The notes: generated by a model from the letters alone, not told the origin. 64,000 nucleotides of DNA from IMGVR_UViG_3300030673_000004:124001-188000; one strand, 5' to 3'; shown: positions 19,933 through 62,284, counted from the stretch's first letter. Numbers and translations are program-made.

Positions 19933-19979
19933 GTTGACAAGCATACAAAATTAATGTATATTTGTTCTTGTCACCTCAA
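19933..19979 (+). repeat. 47-bp promoter/leader direct repeat, copy 1
   Basis: 45/47 identical to 21280..21326. Confidence 0.9.
19934..19962 (+). promoter_or_regulatory. sigma70-type promoter with internal TACA-N7-TGTA
   Basis: TTGACA-agcatacaaaattaatg-TATATT. Confidence 0.85.
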
Positions 19980-19994
19980 TAGCAAGGATTACAA

Positions 19995-20180
19995 ATGAAG
20001 ATCACTGAACTAACAGACGCTCAATGCAAGAAGATTGCTCAGCATAATCCTGATTGGATGGCTAAGAATCGTCCTGCTTGGATAGCTGAAAATCGCCCTT
20101 ATTGGATGGCTAAACATTGCCCGGAAGTAATGGCAAAGTATACTTTTGATGTTCCTGCAGATATTCTTAAATATCTGTGA
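19995..20180 (+). CDS. Small protein with four 8-aa tandem repeats
   Basis: HNPDWMAK/NRPAWIAE/NRPYWMAK/HCPEVMAK; AAGGA SD behind the promoter. Confidence 0.7.
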   Translation: MKITELTDAQCKKIAQHNPDWMAKNRPAWIAENRPYWMAKHCPEVMAKYTFDVPADILKYL

Positions 20181-20187
20181 GATACTA

Positions 20188-20216
20188 TTGACATTCATAC
20201 AAAATTAATGTATATT
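20188..20216 (+). promoter_or_regulatory. sigma70-type promoter with TACA-N7-TGTA (leaderless start at 20223)
   Basis: TTGACA-ttcatacaaaattaatg-TATATT. Confidence 0.85.
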
Positions 20217-20222
20217 GTGTTT

Positions 20223-20540
20223 ATGAAAATCGGACCTGCTTCTGCAACTGGAAATACTTATCCCCACCGTCAGATTCTATTGGCGACGGGGTGGCAGTGG
20301 AATGGGCAGCTTCGTTGCTGGCAGAAAGCACGCTACGAGGAAGGGAGTTTGACTCTTTCCGGCGTAACAATCACAGTACACTGGGATCTTGTAGATCACC
20401 TTACGCAGATGATTGCGGATCTGAAGCGTCCTGTTGAGTTTAAGAATTCACATACGTATGCTCGTTCTATGTCACAGAAGAGTCAACTTCCTGACTTGGA
20501 GAGAGAGTTGCGTTGTGAGCTGGCTTTGCGTAACAACTGA
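20223..20540 (+). CDS. Hypothetical early protein
   Basis: The track start (20208) lies inside the -10 element, so ATG 20223 is preferred. Confidence 0.65.
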   Translation: MKIGPASATGNTYPHRQILLATGWQWNGQLRCWQKARYEEGSLTLSGVTITVHWDLVDHLTQMIADLKRPVEFKNSHTYARSMSQKSQLPDLERELRCELALRNN

Positions 20541-20562
20541 ATCCTAAAAGGAGTACACGTTT

Positions 20563-20886
20563 ATGTTTCACATTCATTCTTTCAGCGCATCCTCTGTGAC
20601 TGGTGCTACTGTTACTCAGCATGTAGATAAGTACTGGTACCCGGAGGTGCATACGCATCAAGTATGTGCCTGTGGTGTGTCAAAGGTTCGTGTTACGAAG
20701 CTGCCTTTCGTCCTTACAGAGTCTCTGGCATGGCGTTCTGTAGTCGCCTACCTTAGAATTGTTGCTTCACAGAATCCAAAGCATACCCTGATCGTGGCTA
20801 TGGCTGAGTTGAATGTCCTGTTCGATCAGTATGCTGAAAAAGTTGCAGCTAAGGAAGCGCAAGCAAACGTTCCAAAGGGTTCGTAG
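20563..20886 (+). CDS. Hypothetical early protein
   Basis: 107 aa, AAGGAG SD. Confidence 0.65.
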   Translation: MFHIHSFSASSVTGATVTQHVDKYWYPEVHTHQVCACGVSKVRVTKLPFVLTESLAWRSVVAYLRIVASQNPKHTLIVAMAELNVLFDQYAEKVAAKEAQANVPKGS

Positions 20887-21011
20887 CTGCTCTGGTGTTA
20901 GTAATCAGCAAAAAGCTAATATTGATGCTGCCGTTGCTATAGTTTCAAATAAAGGCGCAGCATTGATATTCTTTCTGACTATAAAGATCTTTAACTTAGG
21001 AGGCTGTGTTT

Positions 21012-21275
21012 ATGTTTGGGGATGTAACTATGTTTATTTTCTGTTTTGGTGGTGTGCTGCTCATCTGTACTTTGTGGTTCCTTGTTAAGCCATCAGTGTC
21101 AACTAAGAATAAGGATCTGGTATTTTGCTTTGCTGTTGCCTGTGCATTCTTAGCTGGTGGTTTATTCGGACTACACATTTTTCAAAGCTTCTTAGCTTTG
21201 GGTATTTCGTTGTTGATCTTGATAAAGTGTAGAGTTTCCCGATTTAATTCTTGGCTTGAGCGATATCGTAAATAA
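21012..21275 (+). CDS. Small multi-pass membrane protein
   Basis: AGGAGG SD; three hydrophobic segments. Confidence 0.6.
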   Translation: MFGDVTMFIFCFGGVLLICTLWFLVKPSVSTKNKDLVFCFAVACAFLAGGLFGLHIFQSFLALGISLLILIKCRVSRFNSWLERYRK

Positions 21276-21279
21276 TTTA

Positions 21280-21326
21280 GTTGACAAGCATACAAATTGA
21301 ATGTATATTTGTTCTTGTCACCTCAA
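21280..21326 (+). repeat. 47-bp promoter/leader direct repeat, copy 2
   Basis: 45/47 identical to 19933..19979. Confidence 0.9.
21281..21309 (+). promoter_or_regulatory. sigma70-type promoter with TACA-N7-TGTA
   Basis: TTGACA-agcatacaaattgaatg-TATATT. Confidence 0.85.
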
Positions 21327-21339
21327 CACGGAGTTCAAC

Positions 21340-22267: not shown

Positions 22268-22405
22268 ATGCCTGATGCTGAGCAGCCCTTACGCTATGTT
22301 GACTTTGACGGCAAGATACGAGAAGTATCTGCTGCTGTTTTAGATAACTTGGACGATTATATTCCTCAAGAAGCGTCGGCTGCCTCTGAGAGGGAGCTTA
22401 ACTAA
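22268..22405 (+). CDS. 45-aa acidic ORF below the track cutoff
   Basis: MPDAEQPLRYVDFDGKIREVSAAVLDNLDDYIPQEASAASERELN*; its TAA overlaps the next ATG (TAATG). Confidence 0.5.
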   Translation: MPDAEQPLRYVDFDGKIREVSAAVLDNLDDYIPQEASAASERELN

Positions 22406-25400
22406 TGCTGTTTGCCCTGGGTGCTCAGTTTGAAAAAGATTCTAATCATTTAGATGAATCCATTGTGAGCAATATTCGCTGTGGTTTTGAAGCTGAGTTC
22501 GCATCTGAAGTATCTTACGATACTTGTGGTGAATACTTAGAAGAAAACCTACAAGATAGAACAGGTGCTGTTATTATAGCTAAGAGTTATGGGGCGTCTC
22601 ATAATAGTTCTTATGAGGATTGGTCTGTAGAATCTGATAGCTCTATCCCAACAGCAATACAGTATCCTAACCAGGTTGAAATTGTATCTCCGATTCAAGA
22701 TGTAGAAAAGACTATAGATGACCTTGGTGTTGTTTTTGAACTGATTAAGAGTCATGGCAAGACAGCGCAGGCTACGGGTCTTCACATGACATTTAGCATT
22801 AAAGATGTTAATTTATATGAGGATAAATTTGACCATTTGAAGTTTTTGTTTCTTGTTGGTGAGAGCTATTACGCTAAGTTTTTTGGACGTGTTGCTTATG
22901 GCTATGCTCTGGAGTTTTTAACAGTATTCAAGCAAAAACTTCTTGCTTATTTGTATCAGGTTGACAAAGTAACTATAACGCCTTCTGATTGTGCTGAGTT
23001 TGTACGAATACATGCAAGTCAGCCTTTTGCTGGGTTTTCTGAGAATATCAAAGCTGTAGGTGAAGATAATAAAGGTCTTTACACACTATTCGCTGCATAT
23101 AAAGAAGCTAGTGCTAATTTATCTGATCGGTACCAATCAGTTAATACTCAGCATCTAACTAAAGACGCTTCTCGTATTGAGTTTCGGCTTCCTGGTGGGG
23201 CTGGGTATGAGAATAAGTTTGAGCAGTGCTCTAGGCTAATGCGTGTTCTGGCTAATGCTCTATGGGTATCTCGTGCTGGGATGACTCAATATAATGATTA
23301 TTATATTAAGAAACTGACTCGTTTAGTGCTGGCGGCACAAGAAGAGGCACGCTCTGATAAGGCTACTCTTAATCAGACTGATACAAATAGAACATTTCGT
23401 ATTCAAACTACACAAGAGGGTCGTAATACTGTACATCAGTTAATGCGGTTTGAAAAGACACGTATGCAAAAGCCTACAGCTACGGCTGTTGCTTCTTTTG
23501 TATTTTCGGGGAGTGATGTTAAGCACATCGGCGTGCATCGTGCTATCAATGGTGATGCAAATGAAGCTTTTTTTGACTGTGTGAGGAAATTTTCTGAAGC
23601 GCAGTTGTGGTCTATTGCCGGTGCAGTTCACTGCATTGAAGGGCAGGAAGCTGTGTGTGATGGTTTAGATCGTCCTGAGTTGAATACTCTTGTTTTAGCT
23701 ATTCAAGCAAGACCAACGTTAGATTTTCCTGATATTAGATCTAATGATCCACAAGACTGGTCTATTGTACCTCGTATCGTAGAAAAGATCGGTCAGTTAT
23801 CTGGGAAGTCTCGTGTGTGGGCGTCTGCTTTTGCTCTTAATTATGTTGTTATGGGTTGCTTACAGTTTGCTCATAACATTGGTAGCTTTCCTACGTCGGA
23901 TACTGAGTTCAAATCTATTGGACAGCTTGTTATATGGGCTAAGTCTGCACTATCTCCTGAGAGTCTTGTTTACTTTAAGTTTTGGGTATGGGCGAAGCTA
24001 GATTCAAACTATGATTATTCTGCCGATAATGCTCTTGATGATCTCACTTCTGGGTTTATGCTGGCCCACATTGGTAGTACTGCAGTGCTAAAACGTACAT
24101 CTATGGGCTATATGAGTTTTGGTACTGTGCTCAGTTTAGCTCGTTATCGTAAACTAAGTAATTCTCTATCTAAGGATATTCTTAATGTCTTCCCTTCGAC
24201 AACTAATGTGTCGTTTATCATTAAGGGTATAATTTCCTTAAAGGCTGTGTCCAATCCTTTAGATTGTGCTGGTTTAATTGTATTATTAAAGGATTGCATA
24301 CAGTCAAAGCCTGCAGTTTCTGAGTGTCAATCTGTTTTGTACATAGTGTACAAAACTTATGGTCTGACTACATTTACAGAGCTGCTTTTTAAGTGTACAA
24401 GACAGCTCGCTACTTTTGATGGTAGCGCTGCTGCCGATGGCGACAGTTCTTACATACTGGAAGATATACTAAGCCCTATAACATCTTCAGATATCCCAGA
24501 TTCAGCCAAATTAGATATAGAAAAAGCTATAGCAACTACTGTAAACTCTGAGTTGCGTAAAGGTAGTGAAAAAATTAGTGTTTATGATATTCTGTTGGAA
24601 GCTGAGTCTCGGGATACATTGTCTATACCTGATACGTTGCATATTCTAGATAGCGCTACAGAAAGTGATCTTGAAACTTTCAGAAGTAGCTCCGTTGTTG
24701 CTTTTAAGCTAGCAAGAGCAGCTTGGCTTTTGAATAGATCTGGATTAAAACTTCCAGTAAATAAAGCTCTTGCTGTGATATACTTAAAAAATCCTGTTTG
24801 GTTCGGTGCTCTTGCTGCTGTAGCACTTATACCAAACTCAAACATGTATAATCATGACTACACGTGGCTTTTTGGTATTAAGCCTACAGCTTTTCTTCGA
24901 GATCTTTTCACTAAGGCTGATACTCTTTTTCCGTACATTAAGCGGACTATGTCTGCTGCAAGTCACATAGATTTCTGTTCTTTATTGCAGCATGTACCTG
25001 TCGTAGATAAGCACTTGGCGTTTGGTAAGGATGCTTTGAATTTTCTGCTCAAGTCTCTAGCTTTAGGTCTCATGAAATATCCTTGGGATAATAAATCTGT
25101 TTTTTACGAGTTTCCTTCTTATGAGACACGAGAGTATACAGGTACTCTACTTCCTGTTTTGGATTATCTTGCAGGTCAAGAGACCAAGCACCGCAGGACA
25201 ACAATACGATTAGCTAGCCTGAATTTTATACCACTAGACTTCCGTGTTGGTGATGCTTACGAAGGGACAGAGCCCGGTCCTTATTTTAATCTTAAGGTAT
25301 CTCGCACGGATGTTCAGACATGGCGCTCATCCTTTGCCGAAAAGTTGAGTGAAAAGGAACCGTTTGATTATCCTGTAGAAAAACCTGTATCTGACACAGG

Positions 25401-26214
25401 TGTAGTTTCAGAAGATAAATCTGTACCTCCGGAGGTTTTATACAAGGTCCGGAAGTATAGCATTACAGATAATTACGATCTGACAAGAGAAGATGTAAGG
25501 TCATTTATTGATAATGCCTCAAAAGATGATTTGCTTAAATTCTTTACGTCTATTTTTGCGGATCCTGCTCTTATCTATAGAGACTTTGTCGAATTTAATA
25601 GTATTCGTGATACAGCTAGAGTAAGTACAAACCCAGCAGTATGGCAGGCTATTCATGAGTTTGTTTTAGGCTATTCTTCAGTAAATCGTGGAGTGATTGC
25701 CATTGCTGATTGGCTGATGTATGTATTTGCTGCTCATCGTACAGATGCTGATGAAACAGTGCCTTCTACTTTATATGGTGCGTCATATTCACAAGTTTTA
25801 TATGATACCTTAACTATGGTAGCAGACGGCAGTAACGTTGCTTATATACCATATTCATTACTTAGTACATACACGTTTGCCCTTGCTCTTAAAGATAGCA
25901 ACCCGGATATTTATAGGATGCTAACTAGTAATCTTGCTATTAAGGCTATTAAGCAAAATGTACGTAAACATGTTAATACACGTCTGCGTACATTACCGGA
26001 TGCTGCGATTGACACGTACAACAGCAAGCATGTAGTGTCGGCTAGCATTACTCCGATATTATACACGGAGGATAGAACACCTTTGGGTGATTATTTACTT
26101 CAGTTAGTAGGTCGTAGTAAAGTAGCTTCTGAAGTGTATAAACTTCATCAGGAGCATCAGCTAGATAGCACAAAACCAGAGCCTGTCTATCCTTGGCGTT
26201 CGGCCTTCGCGTAG
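22405..26214 (+). CDS. Amidoligase-domain protein, paralog 3 (1269 aa)
   Basis: CGFEAEF, YGASH, WSVESDSSI, VEIVSPI, TGLHMTFS, RYQSVN and IEFRLPGG. Confidence 0.85.
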   Translation: MLFALGAQFEKDSNHLDESIVSNIRCGFEAEFASEVSYDTCGEYLEENLQDRTGAVIIAKSYGASHNSSYEDWSVESDSSIPTAIQYPNQVEIVSPIQDVEKTIDDLGVVFELIKSHGKTAQATGLHMTFSIKDVNLYEDKFDHLKFLFLVGESYYAKFFGRVAYGYALEFLTVFKQKLLAYLYQVDKVTITPSDCAEFVRIHASQPFAGFSENIKAVGEDNKGLYTLFAAYKEASANLSDRYQSVNTQHLTKDASRIEFRLPGGAGYENKFEQCSRLMRVLANALWVSRAGMTQYNDYYIKKLTRLVLAAQEEARSDKATLNQTDTNRTFRIQTTQEGRNTVHQLMRFEKTRMQKPTATAVASFVFSGSDVKHIGVHRAINGDANEAFFDCVRKFSEAQLWSIAGAVHCIEGQEAVCDGLDRPELNTLVLAIQARPTLDFPDIRSNDPQDWSIVPRIVEKIGQLSGKSRVWASAFALNYVVMGCLQFAHNIGSFPTSDTEFKSIGQLVIWAKSALSPESLVYFKFWVWAKLDSNYDYSADNALDDLTSGFMLAHIGSTAVLKRTSMGYMSFGTVLSLARYRKLSNSLSKDILNVFPSTTNVSFIIKGIISLKAVSNPLDCAGLIVLLKDCIQSKPAVSECQSVLYIVYKTYGLTTFTELLFKCTRQLATFDGSAAADGDSSYILEDILSPITSSDIPDSAKLDIEKAIATTVNSELRKGSEKISVYDILLEAESRDTLSIPDTLHILDSATESDLETFRSSSVVAFKLARAAWLLNRSGLKLPVNKALAVIYLKNPVWFGALAAVALIPNSNMYNHDYTWLFGIKPTAFLRDLFTKADTLFPYIKRTMSAASHIDFCSLLQHVPVVDKHLAFGKDALNFLLKSLALGLMKYPWDNKSVFYEFPSYETREYTGTLLPVLDYLAGQETKHRRTTIRLASLNFIPLDFRVGDAYEGTEPGPYFNLKVSRTDVQTWRSSFAEKLSEKEPFDYPVEKPVSDTGVVSEDKSVPPEVLYKVRKYSITDNYDLTREDVRSFIDNASKDDLLKFFTSIFADPALIYRDFVEFNSIRDTARVSTNPAVWQAIHEFVLGYSSVNRGVIAIADWLMYVFAAHRTDADETVPSTLYGASYSQVLYDTLTMVADGSNVAYIPYSLLSTYTFALALKDSNPDIYRMLTSNLAIKAIKQNVRKHVNTRLRTLPDAAIDTYNSKHVVSASITPILYTEDRTPLGDYLLQLVGRSKVASEVYKLHQEHQLDSTKPEPVYPWRSAFA

Positions 26215-26227
26215 ACCACTTCTTGAT

Positions 26228-29200
26228 ATGGACATTGTAACTGCTGCTCAATTTGATAGAGATCTGAGTAAAAATCTGTCTAGTCTTCCTGTTCGTTGCG
26301 GCTTTGAGGCTGAGTTTGCTTCTGCCTTGCCTCATGATCGTATCCCTACAATACTTGAAGCGTTTCTGCAGAATCCGGGGAAGACGGATATTGAAGGCAT
26401 ACCAGAGCGTCTTGGCCCTCGCCCTGGTATTGAAGTAAACAATAGCTATGGTGCGTCTCATGGTGGTTCCTACAAATCTTGGTCTGTAGAAACTGATAGT
26501 ACTATTCATGTTGATAATCATCATTCCTATCGCATTGAGCTTGTTAGTCCTATTTTGACTCTCCCTGATATGATTCACGGGCTCAAGGCTGTAATGGCTA
26601 TGCTCCGTAGTAATGTTGAATTACCTTCAGAGTATGTAGATCAAGACGTTGTATCTTTAGGTGAGACAGATAAAGAAACAGGTTGTCATCTTACGTTCTC
26701 TATTAAAGATATAGACTTATCTAAAGTTGACGTACTTAAGCTAGCGGTCCTGCTCGGGGAGGATCATTGGGGTGATGTATTCGGTCGCCATAATAATGGT
26801 TGGGCTGAAGAGGCGTTAGATCATTTCAAGAATTGGGTTACGACAAAAGAGATTAAGGATCCCAGAGATTTAGCCGCCGCTGTGTCAGATCTATGCAATA
26901 GATCTGCATTAGATGTCCAGGATTCGGAATTATTTAAGTGGTTGGATAACAGGATGGAGAAGTATCGCTCTATTAACATGAGTAAAACTCGTCAAGGTGT
27001 TTTAGAGTTCCGATTACCTGGTGGTAAGGATTATCAGTATAAAGATGATAAGCTAGCTATCGTTGCGGAACGTTTCGCTTATGCTTTTTATGCCTCGGCG
27101 GACCCTACCGCTTATGCTGATTACTACAAACAGAAACTTGTACGTATTGCTTTGAAGTTTATGGCTACACCTGAAGCACAGCAGCGTAGCGCTACACAGA
27201 TATACGATGAATCTAAAGTTTTTATGCGTGTTCGTTCTACTGGTGGTAGTTCTTATTTATGTTTGATGCCTGATGATAAACCCTTGTCCGCACCTGCTAT
27301 GGCTTTTGCTCTTAAATCTCTTGGCGAGGGTGCCTACAGTATTGAGCAAGATGTCCCAGAGCAGCAGAGTTTTAGATCTATCACGGGTACTATTAATTTG
27401 GTTAAGACTAACTCAATCTTGGGATATGTTAGTTATGCTTTGATTAATACTAAGTTCAAATTAAGTGATACTGTTGTATCCTCCCTATTAAGGTCATTTC
27501 TCTTACCACGCAGCGTACCAGATACACGCTCGGTGCAGCATTATATCTATCTGCCCCATACGTCTGTAGATGAATTATCTGTTTCAAAGTTTGCTACTAC
27601 TACAATTGACGTGAATTGGCCTGAGTCCATAAAAGAGGCTGTTCAAAAAGAAAAAGATGCGAGTAGTGAGTGGCTGGCCCCTGGTGGTTCGTTATATTTG
27701 AGCCGAATAGTAGCTGCTATACGGAATTCTAAGGCATCAGACATCATTAAGTTACATGCTCAGTATAATGATCAATTAAATACATTGATTTATGGTGATT
27801 TTCGCGGTGTTCATTTAGACCAGTTAGCTGGTGATCCGTTAGCTAAGAATAAGTTTGATCTTATGCACACGGTTGAAGCTCCTGCTGCTGACATAGCTAA
27901 TTACCTAAACTCCTCAGACTATCAACGTGAGGTACAAACAGCGTGGGGAGAACGGTTTAATGGTAATAGGCCGATACCATTTATAATACTTAGTTCGTTA
28001 TCTCAACTAGATGAGTCTTTTGTAGCTCGTTTGAAAACTCACTATTGGTTATTTGCTGAGTGTTTCCCTGGGACAGTTAAGAGCTACGCTGACGCGATTG
28101 ACCCTGACGAGGTTTCTTTCTATTTAGATGTCTTGCGTTTATTACCCGAAGAGAAGAAAGAATCTTTAATTGTTCCCGTTAGTGCCTATATAGGTAGGCA
28201 GCTAGCTGGCACACTTAATGCTGATGCTCTTTCAGATGATATTTTTGTAAAAGAGCTTAATGTTCTATTAGAGCATGTATCGGATATTGCTGATACAGGT
28301 GCCAAAGATACTACAGAGGTAGAACTCCCTACTGTGCTTAGTACGGTTTCTACTAGAATAATTCTAAATATGCAGGGTATGGCTGCCCAGGCCATAAGTC
28401 CTGTATTGGGTATAATTTTCCCTAAGTTGCCTAATTTTGTTAAGTACATGGAGACCATGCATGCACATGCGCTGGTTGATTCTCTCACAGATGATATGTT
28501 ATTAAATTATGATGGTACTGATTTTTCAAATAAGCTTCCTCCATTAACTATAAAAATATTTCTCTCAAATACAGCAAAACAGTTAGAGTCAGCCGGTGCT
28601 TATACCGGTACTGACGTTTCTGAGATAGCCACTGCTTTTGTTTTAGCTTATGCTAAGGGTATCATAGATACGATACCCAAGCAGCTAGACTCTACTGTAG
28701 TCTCACAGGCCGCTGTTCATTGTGTCTTAAACATGAAAAATGCTGCTATGGAGGGCAATGATGAACTCTATGTGAAACTTAATGTTTTTGTAGATCAAGG
28801 AACCCGGATTTTAGACATTGCACCTAAGCTTAAATCTGAATTGTATCGTGCTTACTTACACGACATGAGTAAAGAGAAAGAGACAGAAGATAGCTTAAAA
28901 GAAAAAGGTGCCTTGACATTAGCCGCCTTGATAGCTATCGGGTACGGTACTTATGGTGCTCAAGCTTTAGGTGCAGGATCGGCTACTTGTTTTAATGCTG
29001 CTGTAAAACATTATCGTGGTGCATGGACGAGTTCTGTAACAGATGATTTTTTACACCACATGAATGCGTTGTGTAATTTATCTCGCCCTCTGCCCGCGTG
29101 TTCTTTGTTTGATGCTATAAGTAAGCTGATCTCTACATACCCTACTACCGGGGATCCTGCGGCGGACAGTCTTAGGGGTATATTTTCAGATTATCAAGTG

Positions 29201-30076
29201 GCATCTACTAAAATAACAACTCAAAAAGATTTAATTGTTACATATCCTAAAATGCACATTGAGTTGCAGGATGCGCCTGTGGTACCGTATCCTGCTGATT
29301 TCTCTGCTCAGTATAGATTGACACCTAAGCAATTAGCTTCTTTCTTTGGCTCTCCTAGTGGTGAAGAGGTGGATCGTGCTTCTCTGGCACCCCTGCCGTT
29401 CAAAGCATCACATCTACTGATTACTAATCTGAATGCTTACACAGTTAAGCAGCTTGATGAGCTGTACTCTTGCCCGGCACCTAGTGCGGAGGCACAATCA
29501 TTCGGTGATTCTTTGGCAAGGACTATATTTGCTGCTACTAAGTCTGGACCTTGTCCTGCTTCCTTGCTGACATCAAACATAGCACGTGCTTATATGACAT
29601 CTACATCACCGGGTATGGGAACATTCTTGTTTCAGTATATAGAATCTATTTTAATACCTGACGATGATTTTCGTAGATTTAATATGTTTACTGGTGGTAC
29701 GAGTAATCCTGAATTGGGGTCTGTTCTGTTCTCCTCGTTGCTACCTTTCTATTCTATTTATGCTTCTATTACCCATGTGGGTAGGCAACATGTTTCATTT
29801 GTTGATTTATTGGACGCCTTTATAGGTGATCATGCAGTATCTCCAGAAGCTTTCTGCTCTAAGGAATTTGTTGCTCTGTATAAATTCTGTGTTCATGTTG
29901 GTATTGTTAATAAGATTAGCTCTGATTCTTTACCTGATGCATTATTTGAGGTATATACGGGCCTTAAATTGCATACGCATGTTGCTTTGATTGATGCTTT
30001 GATACATGAGCATAAGAAATCCCATAAAGTAACATCACTATTTCCTATGTATGGGTACCCTTATTATGGCGACTGA
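26228..30076 (+). CDS. Amidoligase-domain protein, paralog 4 (1282 aa)
   Basis: CGFEAEF, YGASH, WSVETDSTI, IELVSPI, TGCHLTFS, KYRSIN and LEFRLPGG. Confidence 0.85.
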   Translation: MDIVTAAQFDRDLSKNLSSLPVRCGFEAEFASALPHDRIPTILEAFLQNPGKTDIEGIPERLGPRPGIEVNNSYGASHGGSYKSWSVETDSTIHVDNHHSYRIELVSPILTLPDMIHGLKAVMAMLRSNVELPSEYVDQDVVSLGETDKETGCHLTFSIKDIDLSKVDVLKLAVLLGEDHWGDVFGRHNNGWAEEALDHFKNWVTTKEIKDPRDLAAAVSDLCNRSALDVQDSELFKWLDNRMEKYRSINMSKTRQGVLEFRLPGGKDYQYKDDKLAIVAERFAYAFYASADPTAYADYYKQKLVRIALKFMATPEAQQRSATQIYDESKVFMRVRSTGGSSYLCLMPDDKPLSAPAMAFALKSLGEGAYSIEQDVPEQQSFRSITGTINLVKTNSILGYVSYALINTKFKLSDTVVSSLLRSFLLPRSVPDTRSVQHYIYLPHTSVDELSVSKFATTTIDVNWPESIKEAVQKEKDASSEWLAPGGSLYLSRIVAAIRNSKASDIIKLHAQYNDQLNTLIYGDFRGVHLDQLAGDPLAKNKFDLMHTVEAPAADIANYLNSSDYQREVQTAWGERFNGNRPIPFIILSSLSQLDESFVARLKTHYWLFAECFPGTVKSYADAIDPDEVSFYLDVLRLLPEEKKESLIVPVSAYIGRQLAGTLNADALSDDIFVKELNVLLEHVSDIADTGAKDTTEVELPTVLSTVSTRIILNMQGMAAQAISPVLGIIFPKLPNFVKYMETMHAHALVDSLTDDMLLNYDGTDFSNKLPPLTIKIFLSNTAKQLESAGAYTGTDVSEIATAFVLAYAKGIIDTIPKQLDSTVVSQAAVHCVLNMKNAAMEGNDELYVKLNVFVDQGTRILDIAPKLKSELYRAYLHDMSKEKETEDSLKEKGALTLAALIAIGYGTYGAQALGAGSATCFNAAVKHYRGAWTSSVTDDFLHHMNALCNLSRPLPACSLFDAISKLISTYPTTGDPAADSLRGIFSDYQVASTKITTQKDLIVTYPKMHIELQDAPVVPYPADFSAQYRLTPKQLASFFGSPSGEEVDRASLAPLPFKASHLLITNLNAYTVKQLDELYSCPAPSAEAQSFGDSLARTIFAATKSGPCPASLLTSNIARAYMTSTSPGMGTFLFQYIESILIPDDDFRRFNMFTGGTSNPELGSVLFSSLLPFYSIYASITHVGRQHVSFVDLLDAFIGDHAVSPEAFCSKEFVALYKFCVHVGIVNKISSDSLPDALFEVYTGLKLHTHVALIDALIHEHKKSHKVTSLFPMYGYPYYGD

Positions 30077-33000
30077 TTATACTGTTGTAACGGCATCTCA
30101 GTTCGATAGAGATCTTCATAGTATTAGTTCTGACTGGTCTAAGTATAAGGGTCCTGCTGTTCGCTGCGGCTTTGAAGCTGAAATGGCTTCTGCTTTATGG
30201 TGGTCTGATTTTGCAGATAAGTTACAATTGGCTCTAGGCATCAATAGGAGTAGCATAGTTGTAAGTGAGCGTTACGGCGCATCTCATGATGGGGATTACC
30301 GCTATTGGTCGGTAGAGTCAGACACATCAATTCAGGTTGATCCGGAGCACCAGTGTCAGATTGAAGTAGTCTCCCCGATACTTGGAATAGATGCTATGCT
30401 GGGGTCTTTGGAGAAGGTCTGCTCGTTGATGGCAACTAAGCAGAGTGGTAAGGCTCTAGCTATTTCAAATAACTCTACTGGATTGCATATAACATTCAGT
30501 CTAGAGGATACTAACCTAACTAAGGTCAATGTTGCTAAGCTGTACCTGTTGCTGGGTGAGGATTACTGGAGATTGGTTTTTGGGCGTAATGATACAAGCT
30601 ATGCAAAATCTGTAAAGCCTGCTTTGCTCGCTATGGTAGCTGAATTGTCTCGTTCTTCTGGCATGAAGAGCATGCAACAGTTTGATCTTGATAAGTTCTA
30701 TCAAGAGATGCGCAGTGATGACATTGGTCGCTATGGTACTATTAATATTTCCAATATAGTTAGCCAGAAAGACTTCCCCGATAAGCAGCGTATCGAGTTT
30801 AGGTTGCCTGGTGGTGCTGGTTATGAGCACAAGTTTTCATTATTAGCACGTGTAGCTCGTAGGTTTGCTTATGCTTTGTACGCATCAACCTGTGATGCTT
30901 ATGATGATGTTTTTGCACTTAAATTGTACAAGTTCCTAGATAAGTATAAAGAAGCTACTCATGAGGATGACCATCGTGTTAAAGCTATAGCAAATACCCA
31001 TGGATTCTCTTTAGTAGATTTTCCTGCAAATATGGATCAGAGTCGTGTTCGGTTATTTAGTTTCATTTATACTGGAAGTAGCCTTACGCACATAGAGGCG
31101 GATAATCCTGCTGCTGGATTCTCATCTGAGATAGAGAGTCAGATAGAGGCGTTGGCTGAGAAGTATGGTGGTCGAAGCATTTCTCTCGGGAGTCACGAGT
31201 TCAGCTTAAAGCCGGAAGTCTTGCTAACGCTGGACCATGGATCTTCGCAGAGATTGGCTTACGGTAAGTATACTGAAACATTGTTACATCTATTTGGGTT
31301 AACTACGAGCGTGCAGCTTTCTCAGTTTACTATGCAGGCTCTTGCAGAAAATTCAAATTGTACAGATATACTGTTTTCCATTATTTCTACTATGGCTGTA
31401 GGACCTCGGGGTGCTGCTGGTTGTTCATATGCTAACTTAGGTTTCTTCTTATCTCAACATGGTGGTGATTCAGATCCTTATGTAATCTATAATAAAGATT
31501 ACTTTCTTGATCATCCTGTTTATTTAGATTACTTCCTTGCTGGTTTTGGTGTAGAACCTAAAGACGGTATCTCTGATTCTTATTTGAGTGCTCTTCGTGG
31601 TATCTTGCAGTATGGTATGATACCGTCTGGTATTACCTCTAGTTTTGTTGGTAAGATAGCTGAAGCCGCTTTTGTGGCGAGTGACTCAGTAGATGCTAAG
31701 ATGCTGCTAAGTTCTTTAGCTACGAAGGGTTATTTAGTAAATGCGTCACAGGCTAGCCATGCTTTTGTACAAGAAGTACTGTCTGATACAGCTAAAGTTG
31801 ATGCATTATTCATGAGAAGAGATGTGGCAGAAATGAACCTTGGTTTTATTTATGGTGTAATAAATAAACTGGGTTTTGCTTCTGAGGTGCGTCCTGCTTT
31901 AATTCAGATAATCAAAGATCACGGCGGTTGGCGTGCATCCGAGACGTTTCCTCGTAATGCCTTAACGTTAGATTTATCTAACGCAGAACTGAACGAGATA
32001 GGTATAACAAATATACCTGGTATTAATCTGCATCCTGATATGCACACGATAAATGAGATACTCGTTGGACTTAAGAATCAGAACTATCCTAGAGACAGCA
32101 TTTCTGCTTTTTTTAATGGTCCCGACGTATTGAGTTATATTAAAACAGAAGATTTTATTGATGATGATGATTTCTGCATAAAATTAGTATCTGGTTGGCT
32201 TGCTAATTATGAAAACGTTCACGGTTCCCTTGTTGAGAATGAGATACTGCATAATGCGGGTATCGCATTTTGGTTTACATCCGCGCTGCATGAATTTGAC
32301 AAACACTTGTTATCTGTTCTTAGCTGGGGTGACGTAGATACTATTTATACCACAGTATTACATAGTAGTTATGCTAACGAGTTATTCCATAAGATTTTAT
32401 CTAGTAGTGCTGCGTCTAAAGAGTTGCCAGCATTTATGCGTGCCTACTTAACTTATGTGAGTTCTGCCAGTAGTGGTGGTATCACTAATGGTGCAATGGA
32501 TGCTCCTCCAAGTATCTATGTACCTTTGTTGAATGAGGCAGGTGTTAAAATACTAACTGCGTTTTTTGAGAAAGGCTTTATTTTTGAGCCTACGTTTAAG
32601 GCGTTGGCAATGACAGTAGACGCCTTTGTAGCATCTTCCTACATAACCGAGATAGCGCCACACTGTTTATTGCTGGATAAAGTGTTCTCAACCTATAAGA
32701 GTAAGTCTGTTGACCCTACTAATGAGAATGGCTTTTTGACTAATCGCATTGAGTCTCTTAGACGTGCGGGTTTTGATGTGCGTGATGTGGCACCAATAGC
32801 TACTAAAGAGTTACAGCATGAGACAGCACCCTATGTTCATGAGTTCTCTGCACCCTTTCAACCATCTCGTGGTGAGCGTAGATCTGTAGAAGATACAATT
32901 TCTTATATTGCAAACCCTCCGTTTCATAAATCTGACTTCTTTGGTGCTGTTGAAGCTATGCCTGCTGAAGATATGCCTGATCTTTTTGTGAAGATACAGT

Positions 33001-33593: not shown

Positions 33594-33610
33594 CTAGGAA
33601 TAATTATCCT

Positions 33611-35410: not shown

Positions 35411-35430
35411 AATCACTGTAAATATAGTTC

Positions 35431-45282: not shown

Positions 45283-45311
45283 TTGACAGAGGTACATACT
45301 TAGTGTAACTT
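45283..45311 (+). promoter_or_regulatory. sigma70-type promoter with TACA-N7-TGTA
   Basis: TTGACA-gaggtacatacttagtg-TAACTT. Confidence 0.7.
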
Positions 45312-46126: not shown

Positions 46127-46155
46127 TTGACAAGTATGCAAGTTAAGTGTATCTT
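46127..46155 (+). promoter_or_regulatory. sigma70-type promoter with TGCA-N7-TGTA
   Basis: TTGACA-agtatgcaagttaagtg-TATCTT. Confidence 0.75.
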
Positions 46156-47343: not shown

Positions 47344-47372
47344 TTGACAGTGCATCTATGTAATGCTATACT
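47344..47372 (+). promoter_or_regulatory. sigma70-type promoter
   Basis: TTGACA-17 nt-TATACT. Confidence 0.75.
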
Positions 47373-47437: not shown

Positions 47438-47800
47438 ATGAAGCTCTTAATTGTAGATGACAGCCTAGACATCCTTTCTGGCATTACAGAATACTTGTCC
47501 CTGGTTCATACAGTTACTGCTTTTGGTGATTCTAGTGAGGCTTTTGATTACATGCAACAACAGCATCTTATTGATCTCCTGATTACAGATTATGAAATGC
47601 CTGGTTACTCTGGGTTGCAGTTAGCTGAGGCTGCTTCTACACTGTTTCCAGCCGTGCCTGTAATTGTGATGACAGGTGCTTCGGATATCTCTTCACTTGA
47701 GAGGAGTCTTTATATTCAGCATATCTTACGCAAACCTTTTTCCCTTAGTAAGGTAGCAGCTATCGTTCAGAGATTTGCTGCTGAGTTAATGCTTGATTAA
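47438..47800 (+). CDS. Single-domain response regulator (CheY-like receiver)
   Basis: LLIVDD, LLITDYEMPGYSG (phospho-Asp), VIVMTG and LRKPF; AGGAG SD; no output domain. Confidence 0.9.
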   Translation: MKLLIVDDSLDILSGITEYLSLVHTVTAFGDSSEAFDYMQQQHLIDLLITDYEMPGYSGLQLAEAASTLFPAVPVIVMTGASDISSLERSLYIQHILRKPFSLSKVAAIVQRFAAELMLD

Positions 47801-50275: not shown

Positions 50276-50304
50276 AATATACATTAATTTTGCATATTTG
50301 TCAA
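50276..50304 (-). promoter_or_regulatory. sigma70-type promoter with TGCA-N7-TGTA (minus strand)
   Basis: Reverse strand reads TTGACA-aatatgcaaaattaatg-TATATT. Confidence 0.85.
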
Positions 50305-50886: not shown

Positions 50887-50915
50887 AATATAGTTTCTAT
50901 TTGTATTTTTGTCAA
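50887..50915 (-). promoter_or_regulatory. sigma70-type promoter (minus strand, operator half-site only)
   Basis: Reverse strand reads TTGACA-aaaatacaaatagaaac-TATATT. Confidence 0.8.
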
Positions 50916-57113: not shown

Positions 57114-57142
57114 TTGACAAATTTACATAAATAATGTAAATT
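57114..57142 (+). promoter_or_regulatory. sigma70-type promoter with an extended palindrome (leaderless start at 57149)
   Basis: TTGACA-aatttacataaataatg-TAAATT; AATTTACAT-N5-ATGTAAATT inverted repeat. Confidence 0.8.
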
Positions 57143-59716: not shown

Positions 59717-59868
59717 CTTTAGGTGCCCACTACTTGGCATAGTAGATTTCTGGGACTACCTTAGGTTGGCCACCTCCTTTTTGATATGCTCTTGTGACGC
59801 TCCTAAGCATCTGTTGTCATGGAAGTGTGATTGGTGCTTAGGGGCTATTTTCTAGAATAGGTAACTTA

Positions 59869-60171
59869 ATGTTTTTCAAAAAGCTATTGGCTGCTCTCTG
59901 TAATGTACGCTTTACCCAAGAGCCTCTAGATACTTTTACTTTTGTATTGTATCTGTCGCCTGAAGATAGGGCTTTGTGGCCCAAAGCTTTAGCTGATCTG
60001 AATGATCTGCTAGTTTTAACAGGCACGAAATCTTCGGAACCTCATCTTGGTATTGCGTGCCGTTTGGATCCTTGGTGCAATAGCATTTCTGGTAAATGTA
60101 CTCACGAGTTATTGTATCAGGTTGTGTCCTGGTCTTTTGAACATGGTTTTCACATAAACACGGCAATTTAG
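59869..60171 (+). CDS. Hypothetical protein
   Basis: 100-aa ATG ORF. Confidence 0.5.
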   Translation: MFFKKLLAALCNVRFTQEPLDTFTFVLYLSPEDRALWPKALADLNDLLVLTGTKSSEPHLGIACRLDPWCNSISGKCTHELLYQVVSWSFEHGFHINTAI

Positions 60172-60364
60172 CTATGTCATCAATTGAAATACAGTTAGAG
60201 ATCGCTAATTCAACTATAGCCGCACTCAAATCTGTTATTGCTGATCTGCAGCGGGAGATTGTTGGGTTGCGTAGTTCTAACGTTCCTACTGATGTATTAC
60301 CTATAATACACCAGCAGGGCTAAGGTAGAAAGTATGTTAATTTTTACTTGGAGGAAATACTCGT

Positions 60365-60697
60365 ATGTCTAAGTTGTTTTCTTTCTTTGCGTTTTGTCTG
60401 CTCTTAAGTCTTGGTGGCTGTTTCGGTTACGGATTTAAGGTTTCAGGCCAGGTATCTTTTCAGGAGGTCTATCGTGTAAACTACTATAGTCCTTTGTTAG
60501 GGGATGATTTTATTACCATAGACTTCTGTGGTCCCTTGAATCGTTCTGTCATTTCAGCAAAAGATCTTGAGCTTATCAAAGCTGGTCCTTGTACTGTTAC
60601 TTCCGCGAATAGAAGGCTTGCTTCTATATTTCAACCAGATGATACTATTGTTAGCGTGATACCCGTTACGTCGAGGGACGTTCCAAATGCCAGATAA
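60365..60697 (+). CDS. Putative lipoprotein
   Basis: GGAGG SD; signal peptide ending in a lipobox-like LGGC. Confidence 0.55.
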   Translation: MSKLFSFFAFCLLLSLGGCFGYGFKVSGQVSFQEVYRVNYYSPLLGDDFITIDFCGPLNRSVISAKDLELIKAGPCTVTSANRRLASIFQPDDTIVSVIPVTSRDVPNAR

Positions 60698-61520
60698 GTC
60701 CATTGAAGGTTGTTTTAAGCGTCTTTCTCGTGCTTTAGGTGATGAGAATCTCGCATCAGATCTTGATACCATTAAGCAACATGTTGAGCTGCTTGAAGAG
60801 AAGAATATCTTTTCTGCATCTGATGACTTGGTCCGGGATATAGTTTCTTCTAAGAACTGGGACGAGGGCTTCCCTGGATCTGCCGCACAGCATTTCGGTG
60901 AGAATACTATAGCTCTTCTTGAGTTCCCCGGTGATACTGCATTTATTCGGGAACTTGACGAGAATTATGTTACTGTCAACTGTCGCATGGTTGATCCTGC
61001 TCGGGATCATCTTTTATCTTTTAAGGATACTAAGAATCAGTATTTAGATCGTACTGCTACGTTGCCTACGCTTCATTCAAAATACTATGTTGTTGCCCAT
61101 AATGCACCAGGTGTTGGGTGGGTTGGTGGTGAGTATCAACTACTTGAGGATACGTCATGTATTTATTTAGATGCAACAAAAGCTATTAGGTGCTGGGTAT
61201 TTCGTACATCCGGTACTAATAATGTGCTTCGTACCAGTTTGCTGCGGCAGATCTCGCGGCTAAAACATGAGCTAACTAATCTGCAGGAGAGTTCCCGGAT
61301 AAAGAATCTGGAGCTTGATGCCCTTCACCATGTTTGGTGTACTGGCTTGTGTTCTGGTGGTCAGCATAGGCATACCCCAAATGATTTGACTCCTGAGATG
61401 CTGCGATCTGCTATTTATCAAGTATCGGCTATGGTATCCCGTGGTCCTGCAGGAGAGCTTCGGAAGCAGTGGTATAAAACTTTAGCTGGTTGGAAGATTG
61501 AGGTTCAAAATGAAGATTAA
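60687..61520 (+). CDS. Hypothetical protein
   Basis: 277 aa, GAGG SD; C-terminal coiled coil with HHVWCTGLC. Confidence 0.65.
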   Translation: MPDKSIEGCFKRLSRALGDENLASDLDTIKQHVELLEEKNIFSASDDLVRDIVSSKNWDEGFPGSAAQHFGENTIALLEFPGDTAFIRELDENYVTVNCRMVDPARDHLLSFKDTKNQYLDRTATLPTLHSKYYVVAHNAPGVGWVGGEYQLLEDTSCIYLDATKAIRCWVFRTSGTNNVLRTSLLRQISRLKHELTNLQESSRIKNLELDALHHVWCTGLCSGGQHRHTPNDLTPEMLRSAIYQVSAMVSRGPAGELRKQWYKTLAGWKIEVQNED

Positions 61521-61704
61521 AACGCCTGATGGTATGGCAACATTGCTTGAAACATATTTACCTACACGTGAAGAGAAGCGTCCTTATGGTCTACCTCCTA
61601 TGGTTGTTCCAAGTGGCCCTGCTATGAGCCGTGTTCGCTTCTCTAGCGGTGAGGAGCGTGAGTACGCTGTAAAAGACTGCCAAGTACAGAAAGGCTTGCA
61701 GTGA
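61510..61704 (+). CDS. Small hypothetical protein (SH3-like)
   Basis: ATG 61510 after GAGG. Confidence 0.55.
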   Translation: MKIKTPDGMATLLETYLPTREEKRPYGLPPMVVPSGPAMSRVRFSSGEEREYAVKDCQVQKGLQ

Positions 61705-61767
61705 TTTCATTAATACGGGAGAACTATGAATGAAAGTATGTATGTACACTTCTAATATGCTTAATTA

Positions 61768-62145
61768 ATGACTAGGATTAATGTAGGAATTAAGCCGAAG
61801 GAATTGCCCAATAAATTACTATTGGCGGAACATAGGGAAATAAAAAGAATTCCTAATATGGTTAGATCTGGTAGGACTAATATGCAAAATATCCCTACTA
61901 AGTTCACTTTAGGGACGGGCCATGTGAAATTCTTCTATAACAAGTTAGGGTACCTTAAGAAAAGGTATACTGAAATATATCTTGAATGCATTAGCAGATC
62001 ATTAAATGTCACATGCTATAATGATTCATTTGATGGAATATCTGACGAATTAATGAACGACTATGAAGAATCTTTGAATGATAGGAATATCTTATTAGCT
62101 AGGATTAATTCAAAAGGTTTTAAGTTACTAAACCAACAATGCTGA
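61768..62145 (+). CDS. denV: Pyrimidine-dimer DNA glycosylase (T4 endonuclease V family)
   Basis: MTRIN N-terminus (catalytic Thr2), LLAEHREIKRI (catalytic Glu) and FTLGTGHVKFFYNKL. Confidence 0.9.
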   Translation: MTRINVGIKPKELPNKLLLAEHREIKRIPNMVRSGRTNMQNIPTKFTLGTGHVKFFYNKLGYLKKRYTEIYLECISRSLNVTCYNDSFDGISDELMNDYEESLNDRNILLARINSKGFKLLNQQC

Positions 62146-62255
62146 AGTTTATGTTAGATGACACACTAGGTCCATCAAGGGAGTCTTGGACGGCATCTTA
62201 AGATATAGGAAGTAGATTTTCAACCCACTAATCTTTGAGACTTCTTGAAAGTACC

Positions 62256-62284
62256 TTGACAAATATACACAAGTAGTGTATATT
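62256..62284 (+). promoter_or_regulatory. sigma70-type promoter with TACA-N7-TGTA (leaderless start at 62291)
   Basis: TTGACA-aatatacacaagtagtg-TATATT. Confidence 0.85.

What the first reader, a model, noticed from the sequence alone, without database searches (positions are those of the whole stretch)
19934..62284. Promoter family with a positionally fixed TRCA-N7-TGTA operator in the -35/-10 spacer
Seen: 11 TTGACA-17-TAnnnT promoters, at 6954, 19934, 20188, 21281, 45283, 46127, 47344, 50304(-), 50915(-), 57114 and 62256. Eight fit TTGACA-N4-TRCA-N7-TG-TAnnnT exactly, so the right half-site overlaps the -10 hexamer. The TG abuts the -10 directly, so it is not the classic TGn extended -10. 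50915 keeps only the left half-site; 6954 and 47344 lack the element. Inference: a dimeric regulator, phage or host, coordinately shuts off or activates the accessory/early regulon. No helix-turn-helix gene was recognised in this window.
Basis: partly seen in the sequence, partly recalled or inferred. Interest (0 to 1): 0.62.

Follow-up and report, generated by a model that had tools for sequence, protein, structure and literature searches.

The report
Jumbo-phage early promoter family, not operator
The repeated motif is real and marks the host-type early promoters of a new 375-kb peat/freshwater phage. Its "two half-sites" behave as two independent promoter modules spread as a copied cassette, not as the binding site of a dimeric repressor.

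Summary
Observation confirmed. The window has 11 TTGACA-N17-TAnnnT sites (about 1 expected), and 8 carry TRCA-N7-TG (0 expected). The whole 375,537-bp virus record has 67 and 26.

They are real promoters. 51 of 67 lie in the 11.5% of sequence that is non-coding. 13 have an ATG that opens an ORF exactly 6-7 nt after the -10 hexamer (0.4 expected). These are leaderless mRNAs, and they fix TG at -14/-13.

The dimeric-operator reading is not supported.
- The half-sites co-occur only because about 20 copies are near-identical. Among 47 distinct spacers they are independent (p=0.76), and likewise in 19 promoters from four related phage lineages (p=1).
- Conservation is not mirror-symmetric.
- The dyad is never found outside the promoter register.
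- TG abutting TA also defines a second promoter class with no -35, (T)GTAAAT, which has no left half-site. This motif is conserved upstream of the phage's own sigma gene in all four lineages.

Best reading: two independent modules, an ATACA block at -26..-22 and an extended -10-like TTAATG at -18..-13. One variant was spread as a promoter(+leader) cassette in front of unrelated small ORFs, as with T4 PeSL elements.

No transcript data exist, so what reads ATACA is unknown.

The parts
6954..6982 (+). Class-1 (-35/-10) promoter without the spacer motif. Leaderless: the ATG at 6989 opens a 916-aa ORF.
19896..19925 (+). Hairpin plus T-run (terminator-like) ending about 8 nt before the -35 of the 19934 promoter. 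This gives a PeSL-like terminator+promoter arrangement. Coordinates are approximate.
   Evidence: G000 143934
19934..19962 (+). Class-1 promoter with the full motif (ATACA, AAATTAA, TG, TATATT). It is followed by the shared cassette leader and an SD. ATG at 19995.
20188..20216 (+). Class-1 promoter with the full motif. Leaderless: ATG at 20223 (105 aa).
21281..21309 (+). Class-1 promoter with the full motif, plus the shared leader ending in an SD. ATG at 21340 (137 aa).
35417..35423 (+). Class-2 promoter core TGTAAAT, with no -35 and no TACA. Leaderless ATG at 35431 (247 aa). The motif is conserved at the orthologous gene in relatives L131 and L133.
45283..45311 (+). Class-1 promoter with GTACA...TG and -10 hexamer TAACTT. 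ATG at 45371 with an SD.
   Evidence: orthologues
46127..46155 (+). Class-1 promoter with ATGCA...TG and -10 hexamer TATCTT. ATG at 46186.
47344..47372 (+). Class-1 promoter without the motif. It precedes a stand-alone receiver-domain gene (ATG at 47438).
50276..50304 (-). Class-1 promoter with ATGCA...TG. ATG at 50243 (92 aa).
50887..50915 (-). Class-1 promoter with ATACA but AC instead of TG. It precedes an HD-domain gene (GTG at 50852).
57114..57142 (+). Class-1 promoter with TTACA...TG. Its -10 region reads TGTAAATT, so it also satisfies the class-2 core. Leaderless ATG at 57149 (91 aa).
62256..62284 (+). Class-1 promoter with ATACA...TG. Leaderless ATG at 62291 (124 aa).

Best explanation
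These are the sigma-70-type (-35/-10, 17-bp spacer) promoters of an uncultivated 375-kb phage from peat and freshwater. Host RNA polymerase most likely reads them immediately after infection. Transcription starts 7 nt after the -10 hexamer, often on the A of the start codon.

The conserved spacer is not one dyad. It is two independent promoter modules:
(a) TTAATG at -18..-13, whose TG abuts the -10. This is an extended -10-like contact in a register shifted by one base. It is also used by the phage's second promoter class, (T)GTAAAT, which has no -35.
(b) An ATACA block at -26..-22. This is the part best conserved across related phages. Its reader is unresolved: polymerase itself or an accessory factor.

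The striking identity of about 20 copies comes from the spread of one promoter variant as a cassette. The cassette often carries a fixed 26-nt leader with SD and sometimes an upstream terminator, and it sits in front of unrelated small ORFs. Selection or gene conversion keeps the copies alike.

Shown: the promoters are real, their register, the independence and asymmetry of the two halves, conservation across the clade, and the second class. Inferred: who reads each module, and the timing of expression.
For: Promoters are real:
- 67 sites at N17 against 4-5 at N16 and N18.
- 51 of 67 lie in the 11.5% of sequence that is non-coding, including 25 of 26 full-motif sites.
- 13 of 67 have an ATG (ORF of at least 50 aa) 6-7 nt after the -10, against 0.44 expected.

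Two blocks rather than a dyad:
- The information profile peaks at A-26..A-22 and T-18..G-13, with nothing upstream of -36.
- Retention among 43 diverged promoters is heterogeneous (chi2 42.6, p=3e-4): C-23 74%, T-17 60%, G-13 58%, T-14 35%, A-19 28%.

Independence of the halves: OR 1.2, p=0.76 after de-duplication. In 19 promoters from relatives, 7 have both halves against 6.6 expected.

Clade conservation in phages with 50-80% protein identity and 44-52% GC: ATACA (at most 1 mismatch) in 14/19, TG in 9/19. The most distant lineage has TG in 1/6 but ATACA in 3/6.

TG-TA is a general promoter feature:
- TGTAAAT occurs 97 times, 34 of them intergenic.
- GTAAAT is followed by an ATG at +5..8 in 17 cases, against 1 for TATAAT and 2 for TTAAAT.
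- An unbiased scan of 374 ORF starts shows TGTA peaking with TA at -12/-11.
- The motif is conserved 40-50 nt upstream of the sigma gene's ATG in all four lineages.

Cassette spread:
- About 10 copies share the same leader.
- The genes downstream are not paralogous.
- 10 of 67 have an upstream terminator, against 1.9% of random windows.
- The whole cassette is nearly identical in lineage B although flanking proteins are about 67% identical.

Precedent: T4 early promoters carry extra consensus beyond UP/-35/TGn/-10 (PMC2988021). PeSL cassettes are described in PMC2839356 and PMC4122927.
Against: - There are no transcript data: no RNA runs hold this phage. Start sites, timing and the polymerase or sigma involved are all inferred.
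- The host is unknown, so it cannot be checked whether host promoters use TG at -14/-13 or an ATACA block.
- Base-specific reading of -26..-22 by RNA polymerase has little precedent, which leaves room for a DNA-binding factor.
- The consensus does form a perfect 5-bp dyad with a 7-bp centre. Its two most informative non-hexamer positions, C-23 and G-13, are mirror images.
- The genome encodes several HTH proteins of unknown role.
- The sample from relatives is small (19 promoters).
Confidence: 0.55

Rival explanations
1. ATACA-N7-TGTAT is an operator for a dimeric phage or host regulator. The regulator occludes the -10 and switches the early/accessory regulon off (or on) as a group.
For: - The consensus is a perfect 5-bp dyad. 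C-23 and G-13, its mirror pair, are the most informative spacer positions.
- An operator inside the spacer that overlaps the -10 is a classic repressor layout (own knowledge: P22 Arc/Mnt, LexA boxes, engineered tetO promoters).
- Full-motif promoters precede small accessory ORFs.
- The genome encodes HTH candidates: a 164-aa protein with three HTH motifs (HTH_28 E=2.6e-10), two roughly 220-aa paralogues with a C-terminal HTH, and a 196-aa sigma-like protein.
- The motif is conserved in relatives.
Against: - The half-sites are uncoupled once copies are removed, and also in relatives.
- Conservation is asymmetric. 'Centre' positions T-17 and A-16 are better kept than arm position T-14.
- The centre AAATTAA is not palindromic.
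- Three of the five right-arm bases belong to the -10 hexamer.
- The dyad is never found outside the promoter register.
- TG-TA also occurs in class-2 promoters that lack TACA.
- The most distant lineage keeps ATACA but not TG.
- The genome has no Xre/CI-type HTH_3, RHH_1, HU or integrase hits.
Confidence: 0.2
2. Hybrid promoters. The host sigma reads -35/-10 early. The phage's own 390-aa sigma has region 2 and a region-3.0-like segment but no detectable region 4. It reads (T)G-TA..T, and later keeps the TG-bearing class-1 promoters active. The TG would then set how long expression persists, not whether the promoter is repressed.
For: - The phage sigma aligns to RpoS regions 2-4.1.
- Its regions 2.3-3.0 are invariant in 7 homologues. 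The positions matching sigma-70 H455 and E458 read R and K.
- Pfam finds no region 4 in it.
- Class-2 GTAAAT has no -35 and is conserved upstream of the sigma gene in four lineages.
- The window promoter at 57114 satisfies both class definitions.
- TG in class 1 varies between lineages while GTAAAT does not.
Against: - This is pure inference; there is no expression or binding data.
- The class-2 hexamer is TAAAT, whereas class 1 is mostly TATAT.
- The model does not explain the ATACA block.
- The second sigma-like ORF (196 aa) could be the class-2 reader instead.
Confidence: 0.15
3. Pure ancestry. All copies descend from one ancestral promoter, and the spacer similarity is unselected residue of copying.
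For: About 20 copies are identical across 19 nt, and about 10 also share a 26-nt leader. The association between half-sites disappears when these copies are collapsed.
Against: - Retention differs strongly between spacer positions (p=3e-4).
- Similarity stops sharply at -36, and the 3-4 nt just after the -35 vary.
- The same blocks are kept in relatives with different GC content and 50-80% protein identity, at orthologous and non-orthologous promoters.
Confidence: 0.07

Closest known systems
T4 early promoters ('uber' UP/-35/TGn/-10 promoters; Hinton 2010, PMC2988021)
   Same: Many near-consensus sigma-70-type phage promoters that carry extra conserved positions beyond the hexamers. They are thought to out-compete host promoters, and they sit in front of small early genes.
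   Different: There is no UP-element conservation here (nothing upstream of -36). The TG is at -14/-13, not -15/-14. There is an ATACA block at -26..-22. The phage is unrelated to known phages at DNA or protein level.
PeSL cassettes (promoter-early stem-loop) of T4-like phages (PMC2839356, PMC4122927)
   Same: Near-perfect TTGACA-N17-TATAAT promoters repeated many times with high identity. They flank unrelated small ORFs, sometimes with a stem-loop just upstream, and are proposed to spread and shuffle genes by recombination.
   Different: Only 10 of 67 have an upstream terminator. Here the conserved partner is a downstream leader with SD. Recombination between cassettes was not tested. The phage is not T4-like.
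Extended -10 element (TGn at -15/-14, read by sigma region 3.0)
   Same: A TG just upstream of the -10. It is enriched in promoters and is the only upstream signal in the class that lacks a -35.
   Different: The register is one base closer to the hexamer: 16/47 against 4/47 at the canonical place.
Repressor operators placed in the promoter spacer (P22 Arc/Mnt, LexA boxes, engineered tetO/lacO promoters; own knowledge)
   Same: A dyad between -35 and -10 that overlaps the -10.
   Different: The half-sites are uncoupled and unequally conserved. No copy lies outside the promoter register, and no cognate regulator has been identified.
phiEco32 gp36 promoters, consensus tAATGTAtA (PMC8948821, PMC12276001)
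   Same: The identical 9-mer TAATGTATA lies inside the consensus here. It is the most over-represented intergenic 9-mer in the genome.
   Different: gp36 promoters were first described as single-element, without a -35 hexamer (PMC8948821), though a later structure shows a contact near -35 (PMC12276001). Here the 9-mer is essentially always paired with a TTGACA-like -35. The leaderless ATGs lie 9 nt after the 9-mer, which fits the TATATT register. Neither phage sigma shows sequence similarity to gp36 or to any sequenced phage.
T4 late promoter TATAAATA (gp55; own knowledge), compared with the class-2 motif
   Same: A -10-only promoter with an A-rich octamer, TGTAAATa against TATAAATA, read by a phage-encoded sigma.
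   Different: The second position is G. The candidate sigma is RpoS-like and 390 aa, not gp55-like. No link to a sliding clamp was tested.

Membership tests
sigma-70-type -35/-10 promoter | TTGACA-like -35 and TAnnnT -10 separated by 17+/-1 bp | tested here: met
   67 sites at N17 against 4 at N16 and 5 at N18. In the window, 11 found against 0.99 expected.
sigma-70-type -35/-10 promoter | Located upstream of genes, with the start site about 7 nt after the -10 | tested here: met
   51 of 67 lie in the 11.5% of sequence that is non-coding. 13 of 67 have an ATG that opens an ORF 6-7 nt after the hexamer, against 0.44 expected. This is indirect evidence; no RNA data exist.
sigma-70-type -35/-10 promoter | Transcribed by a primary-sigma holoenzyme | not testable with these tools
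   The host is unknown, and no RNA runs hold the phage.
dyad operator of a dimeric regulator | Inverted repeat with two equivalent half-sites | tested here: inconclusive
   The consensus has 5-bp arms ATACA/TGTAT. However, 3 of the 5 right-arm bases are the -10 hexamer, and the 7-bp centre is not palindromic.
dyad operator of a dimeric regulator | Half-sites occur together and are conserved alike | tested here: not met
   After de-duplication OR=1.2, p=0.76. In relatives 7 have both against 6.6 expected. Retention is C-23 74% against G-13 58%, and A-22 63% against T-14 35%.
dyad operator of a dimeric regulator | The site exists as an independent unit (other registers or positions) | tested here: not met
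   28 of 35 TACA-N7-TGTA lie in the one promoter register. The remaining 7 are at or below background.
dyad operator of a dimeric regulator | A cognate DNA-binding regulator | tested here: inconclusive
   There are no HTH_3, RHH_1 or HU hits. There is a 164-aa triple-HTH protein, two HTH paralogues and two sigma-like ORFs. Binding cannot be tested here.
extended -10 (TGn) | TG at -15/-14, one base before the hexamer | tested here: not met
   TG is at -14/-13 in 16 of 47 distinct spacers and at -15/-14 in 4 of 47.
extended -10 (TGn) | Can substitute for a -35 element | tested here: met
   Class-2 (T)GTAAAT sites have no upstream conservation and have leaderless ATGs at the correct distance.
PeSL cassette | A highly similar early promoter repeated in front of unrelated small ORFs | tested here: met
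   About 20 copies are identical across 19 nt. The downstream ORFs are not paralogous and have a median of 125 aa.
PeSL cassette | A stem-loop directly upstream of the promoter | tested here: inconclusive
   10 of 67 have a hairpin plus T-run within 70 nt, against 1.9% of random windows. Only 5 full-motif copies have a clean terminator ending 8-11 nt before the -35.
PeSL cassette | Mediates gene gain, loss or shuffling between close relatives | not tested
   Only fragments of relatives were available. Gene-order differences near promoters were seen but not analysed.
phiEco32 gp36-type promoter | tAATGTAtA as a single element read by a gp36-like sigma | tested here: not met
   The 9-mer is present but is nearly always paired with a TTGACA-like -35. 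Neither sigma shows similarity to gp36 or to any sequenced phage.
N4-type hairpin promoter | A stable DNA hairpin at the promoter | tested here: not met
   The dyad folds at -1.3 kcal/mol with z=-1.1 against shuffles.

The most novel reading that the evidence does not exclude
The phage runs a two-reader promoter code. An ATACA block at -26..-22 marks host-read promoters. A G-13/T-14 junction abutting the -10 is the recognition mark of the phage's own RpoS-like sigma, which has an altered region 3.0 and no detectable region 4. Class-1 promoters that also carry TG would then be hybrid promoters, handed over from host sigma to phage sigma during infection. The 'palindrome' would be the accidental overlap of two separate signals. 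This would be a new extended -10 register and a new way of timing expression without a repressor.
Probability: 0.15. Interest if true: 0.7.

Novelty: new variant of a known kind. Interest (0 to 1): 0.45.

Why it matters
The phage belongs to an undescribed clade of very large peat/freshwater phages with no close sequenced relative.

Its transcription signals can be read straight from the sequence: a host-type promoter class with two extra conserved modules, a second class with only a -10 that is probably tied to a phage sigma, and widespread leaderless genes. This gives an immediate map of transcription units for annotating the clade.

It also offers two testable oddities in promoter recognition: a TG one base out of the classic register, and a base-specific block at -26..-22.

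The case is also a caution. A dyad that overlaps the -10 hexamer can look like an operator when most of its symmetry comes from the hexamer and from copied cassettes.

Tried and rejected
1. A loose motif scan of IMG/VR gave 113+ single hits. They turned out to be two orthologous coding-sequence sites in abundant marine phages, so they are irrelevant.

2. The exact consensus is absent from IMG/VR and from 185,579 bacterial/archaeal species genomes.

3. My single metagenome scan used a pattern with one N too many, giving an 18-bp spacer. Its 6 hits are meaningless and the scan was wasted.

4. The correctly spaced pattern in IMG/VR found unrelated 155-166-kb phages of 35-37% GC. Each has one identical promoter, and several have the same ACAAAATTAATGT block shifted 3 bp in front of a canonical TGTGn-TATAAT. 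They lack the G000 sigma and could not be classified. This remains unexplained.

5. The phiEco32 gp36 lead (same 9-mer) was rejected as a family membership.

6. An N4-like hairpin was rejected.

7. RNA evidence: no RNA runs exist. Laying low-coverage DNA contigs of related strains was uninformative.

8. Records of relatives could not be searched whole, so only about 20-kb pieces were used.

9. Searches for a temperate lifestyle or a classic repressor found no integrase, HTH_3, RHH_1 or HU.

10. Text searches of the literature for the block and for TGTAAAT gave nothing relevant.

The host was not identified.

Full report
**1. What the window is.**
The window is G000:C1:124001-188000 of a 375,537-bp IMG/VR virus record with 42.8% GC. 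Its terminal repeat is only 36 bp, which may simply reflect a circular assembly.

The record has no DNA or protein match among 50,697 sequenced phages. It is found in peat metagenomes, and in part in freshwater metagenomes. It carries 34 tRNA genes, a ribonucleotide reductase, and several giant amidoligase-like genes.

**2.
Eight fit TTGACA-N4-TRCA-N7-TG-TAnnnT (0 expected).

Genome-wide there are 67 sites at a 17-bp spacing, against 4-5 at 16 or 18 bp. 26 carry the full motif, and the reversed control pattern gives none.

The consensus is TTGACA, three variable bases, ATACA, AAATTAA, TG, TATATT.

**3. They are real promoters, and the register is fixed.**
- 51 of the 67 sites, and 25 of the 26 full-motif sites, lie in the 11.5% of the genome that my crude ORF map leaves non-coding.
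- 13 of the 67 have an ATG that opens an ORF of at least 50 aa exactly 6-7 nt after the -10 hexamer, where 0.44 is expected. In the window these ATGs are at 6989, 20223, 57149 and 62291.

These are leaderless mRNAs. They place +1 seven bases after TATATT, so the TG sits at -14/-13. Among 47 distinct spacers, TG is at -14/-13 in 16 and at the canonical -15/-14 in 4.

**4. Is it a dyad operator? Five tests say no.**

*(a) Coupling.* Over all 67 sites the two halves are associated (OR 4.8, p=0.003). That association is entirely due to about 20 near-identical copies. After collapsing spacers that differ at fewer than 5 of 17 positions, the table is [[19,9],[12,7]], OR 1.2, p=0.76. Each half on its own is still far above chance: TRCA is present in 19/47 and TG in 16/47.

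*(b) Symmetry.* Among 43 diverged promoters, retention of the consensus base differs strongly by position (chi2 42.6, p=3e-4).

| Position | Retention |
|---|---|
| C-23 | 74% |
| A-24, A-22 | 63% |
| T-17 | 60% |
| G-13 | 58% |
| T-18, A-16 | 56% |
| T-14 | 35% (near background) |
| A-19 | 28% (background) |

This pattern shows two blocks, ATACA and TTAATG. It does not show two mirrored arms around an indifferent centre. Three of the five right-arm bases are also just the -10 hexamer.

*(c) Independence from the promoter.* 28 of the 35 TACA-N7-TGTA in the genome are in the single promoter register. The other 7 are at or below the background seen for other spacings.

*(d) Relatives.* I found homologues of the phage sigma, of the 973-aa protein at window 42358-45279, and of a 339-aa protein, then fetched their contigs. 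This gave four related lineages with 50-80% protein identity and 44-52% GC. Their 19 exact-TTGACA promoters show:
- ATACA (at most 1 mismatch) in 14.
- TG in 9.
- Both in 7, against 6.6 expected (Fisher p=1).
- Retention of 74-89% across the ATACA block, against 58% for T-14 and for G-13.
- In the most distant lineage, ATACA in 3/6 but TG in 1/6.

At orthologous promoters the halves come and go separately.

*(e) A second promoter class.* After masking class 1, the most enriched intergenic words are TGTAAAT and GTGTAAAT.
- TGTAAAT occurs 97 times, 34 of them intergenic.
- GTAAAT is followed by an ORF-opening ATG at +5..8 in 17 cases, against 1 for TATAAT and 2 for TTAAAT.
- There is no conservation upstream of T-14, so no -35 and no TACA.
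- An unbiased look at 374 ORF starts shows TGTA peaking with TA at -12/-11.

So TG abutting TA is a general promoter feature of this phage. It is not half of an operator. In the window, class 2 is seen at 35417 (ATG at 35431), and it is conserved at the orthologous gene in two relatives.

**5. Who might read what (inference).**

The genome encodes a 390-aa sigma-70-family protein at G000 51413-50241, minus strand.
- It aligns to RpoS regions 2 to 4.1.
- Its regions 2.3-3.0 are invariant in seven homologues.
- The positions equivalent to sigma-70 H455 and E458, the residues that read TGn (own knowledge), are R and K.
- Pfam finds no region 4 in it.
- In all four lineages its gene is preceded, 40-50 nt before the ATG, by tgtGTAAAT or tgcGTAAAT in an otherwise diverged spacer.

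I therefore infer that this sigma reads class 2 and auto-amplifies. Class 1 would be read first by the host's primary sigma. Consistent with this, the sigma gene lies about 1.6 kb downstream of, and on the same strand as, the class-1 promoter at G000 53060; a shared transcript was not checked.

A second sigma-like ORF of 196 aa and several HTH proteins exist. Their targets are unknown.

What reads ATACA at -26..-22 is open. C-23 lies one helical turn from G-13, so both face the same side of the DNA. That would suit either polymerase or an accessory factor.

**6. Why so many identical copies.**
- Similarity starts sharply at -36, and the three bases after the -35 vary.
- About 10 copies continue into the same 26-nt leader ending in an SD. 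Another set shares a different start.
- The genes behind the copies are unrelated and small.
- 10 of 67 have a terminator just upstream.
- In lineage B the whole promoter+leader cassette is almost unchanged at the orthologue of G000 267957, although neighbouring proteins are about 67% identical.

This resembles the PeSL cassettes of T4-like phages (PMC2839356, PMC4122927). It also resembles the extra consensus positions of T4 early promoters (PMC2988021).

**7. Leads that did not hold.**
The consensus contains the exact phiEco32 gp36 promoter 9-mer TAATGTATA (PMC8948821; register in PMC12276001). It is the top intergenic 9-mer here. However:
- It is nearly always tied to a TTGACA-like -35.
- The leaderless ATGs fit the TATATT register.
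- The phage sigmas show no similarity to gp36.

The dyad is also not a stable hairpin.

**8. Limits.**
- No RNA data exist.
- The host is unknown.
- ORF calls are crude.
- Relatives are known only as roughly 20-kb pieces.
- One metagenome scan was wasted through my spacing error.

**Verdict.** The operator interpretation is the less likely reading (about 0.2). The most likely reading (about 0.55) is two independent promoter modules plus cassette spread.

Noticed in passing
window 6989, 20223, 57149, 62291, 35431; genome-wide in G000: Leaderless genes are widespread. 13 class-1 promoters and 17 GTAAAT sites have the start ATG 6-7 nt after the -10. These include 916-, 792- and 673-aa paralogues and a CCA-adding enzyme. 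Other genes use a strong AAGGAG SD.
   Followed up: partly
window 35417-35423; G000 e.g. 51458(-), 61224(-), 110882, 288164, 369122, 374476(-): There is a second promoter class, (T)GTAAAT, without a -35. It is dense between the tRNA genes and is conserved upstream of the phage sigma gene in four lineages.
   Followed up: partly
G000 51413-50241 (-) = L009:1081-2253; G000 about 12407-11817 (-) = L136:1447-2037: There are two phage-encoded sigma-like proteins. One is 390 aa and RpoS-like, with altered region 3.0 residues and a 180-aa N-terminal extension. The other is 196 aa with a region-4-type HTH. Neither has a match in sequenced phages.
   Followed up: partly
L137:1168-1662(-) (G000 about 68.4-68.9 kb); L138:889-1689 and 1801-2463 (G000 about 106.4-108 kb): A 164-aa protein carries three HTH motifs. 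There are also two paralogous proteins of about 220 aa with a C-terminal HTH. All sit behind class-1 promoters, and their function is unknown.
   Followed up: no
window 19963-19994, 21310-21339; about 10 copies in G000: The shared cassette leader contains a second dyad, CTTGT-N7-ACAAG, with the same 5+7+5 geometry as the spacer dyad. It spans roughly -2 to +15 and runs into the SD. The loop reads CACCTCA, which resembles the anti-SD sequence.
   Followed up: no
L146, L148, L150, L152-L155 (IMG/VR sample 3300045988; G006-G008): Unrelated 155-166-kb phages of 35-37% GC each carry one promoter identical to the G000 consensus except that the -10 is TATAAT. It sits behind a terminator. Several of their other promoters have the same ACAAAATTAATGT block shifted 3 bp and feeding into a canonical TGTGn-TATAAT. 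Convergence, transfer or a shared host factor could each explain this.
   Followed up: partly
window 47402-47800; L002:1046-1501(-) (G000 about 8.3-8.7 kb): There are at least two stand-alone response-regulator receiver domains without an output domain. The one in the window is conserved in all relatives, next to an AAA ATPase.
   Followed up: no
window 4226-6946, 22405-35410: There is a run of giant genes (906-1282 aa) with weak amidoligase-like matches. They are conserved in relatives, where they are called Amidoligase_2.
   Followed up: no
G000 91.5-118 kb: There is an array of 34 tRNA genes interleaved with small ORFs and both promoter classes. One 96-nt tRNA-like gene has an anticodon loop that could not be assigned.
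   Followed up: no
L123 14513-16543 and 18498-21173: In one related lineage the RecA-like and PolA genes carry intein-like insertions. These are absent from the closest sister contig (L124).
   Followed up: no
L136:764-1372(-): A 202-aa ORF has a weak SpoVG-like match (E=2.4e-4, below the cut-off). It lies next to the 196-aa sigma-like gene.
   Followed up: no
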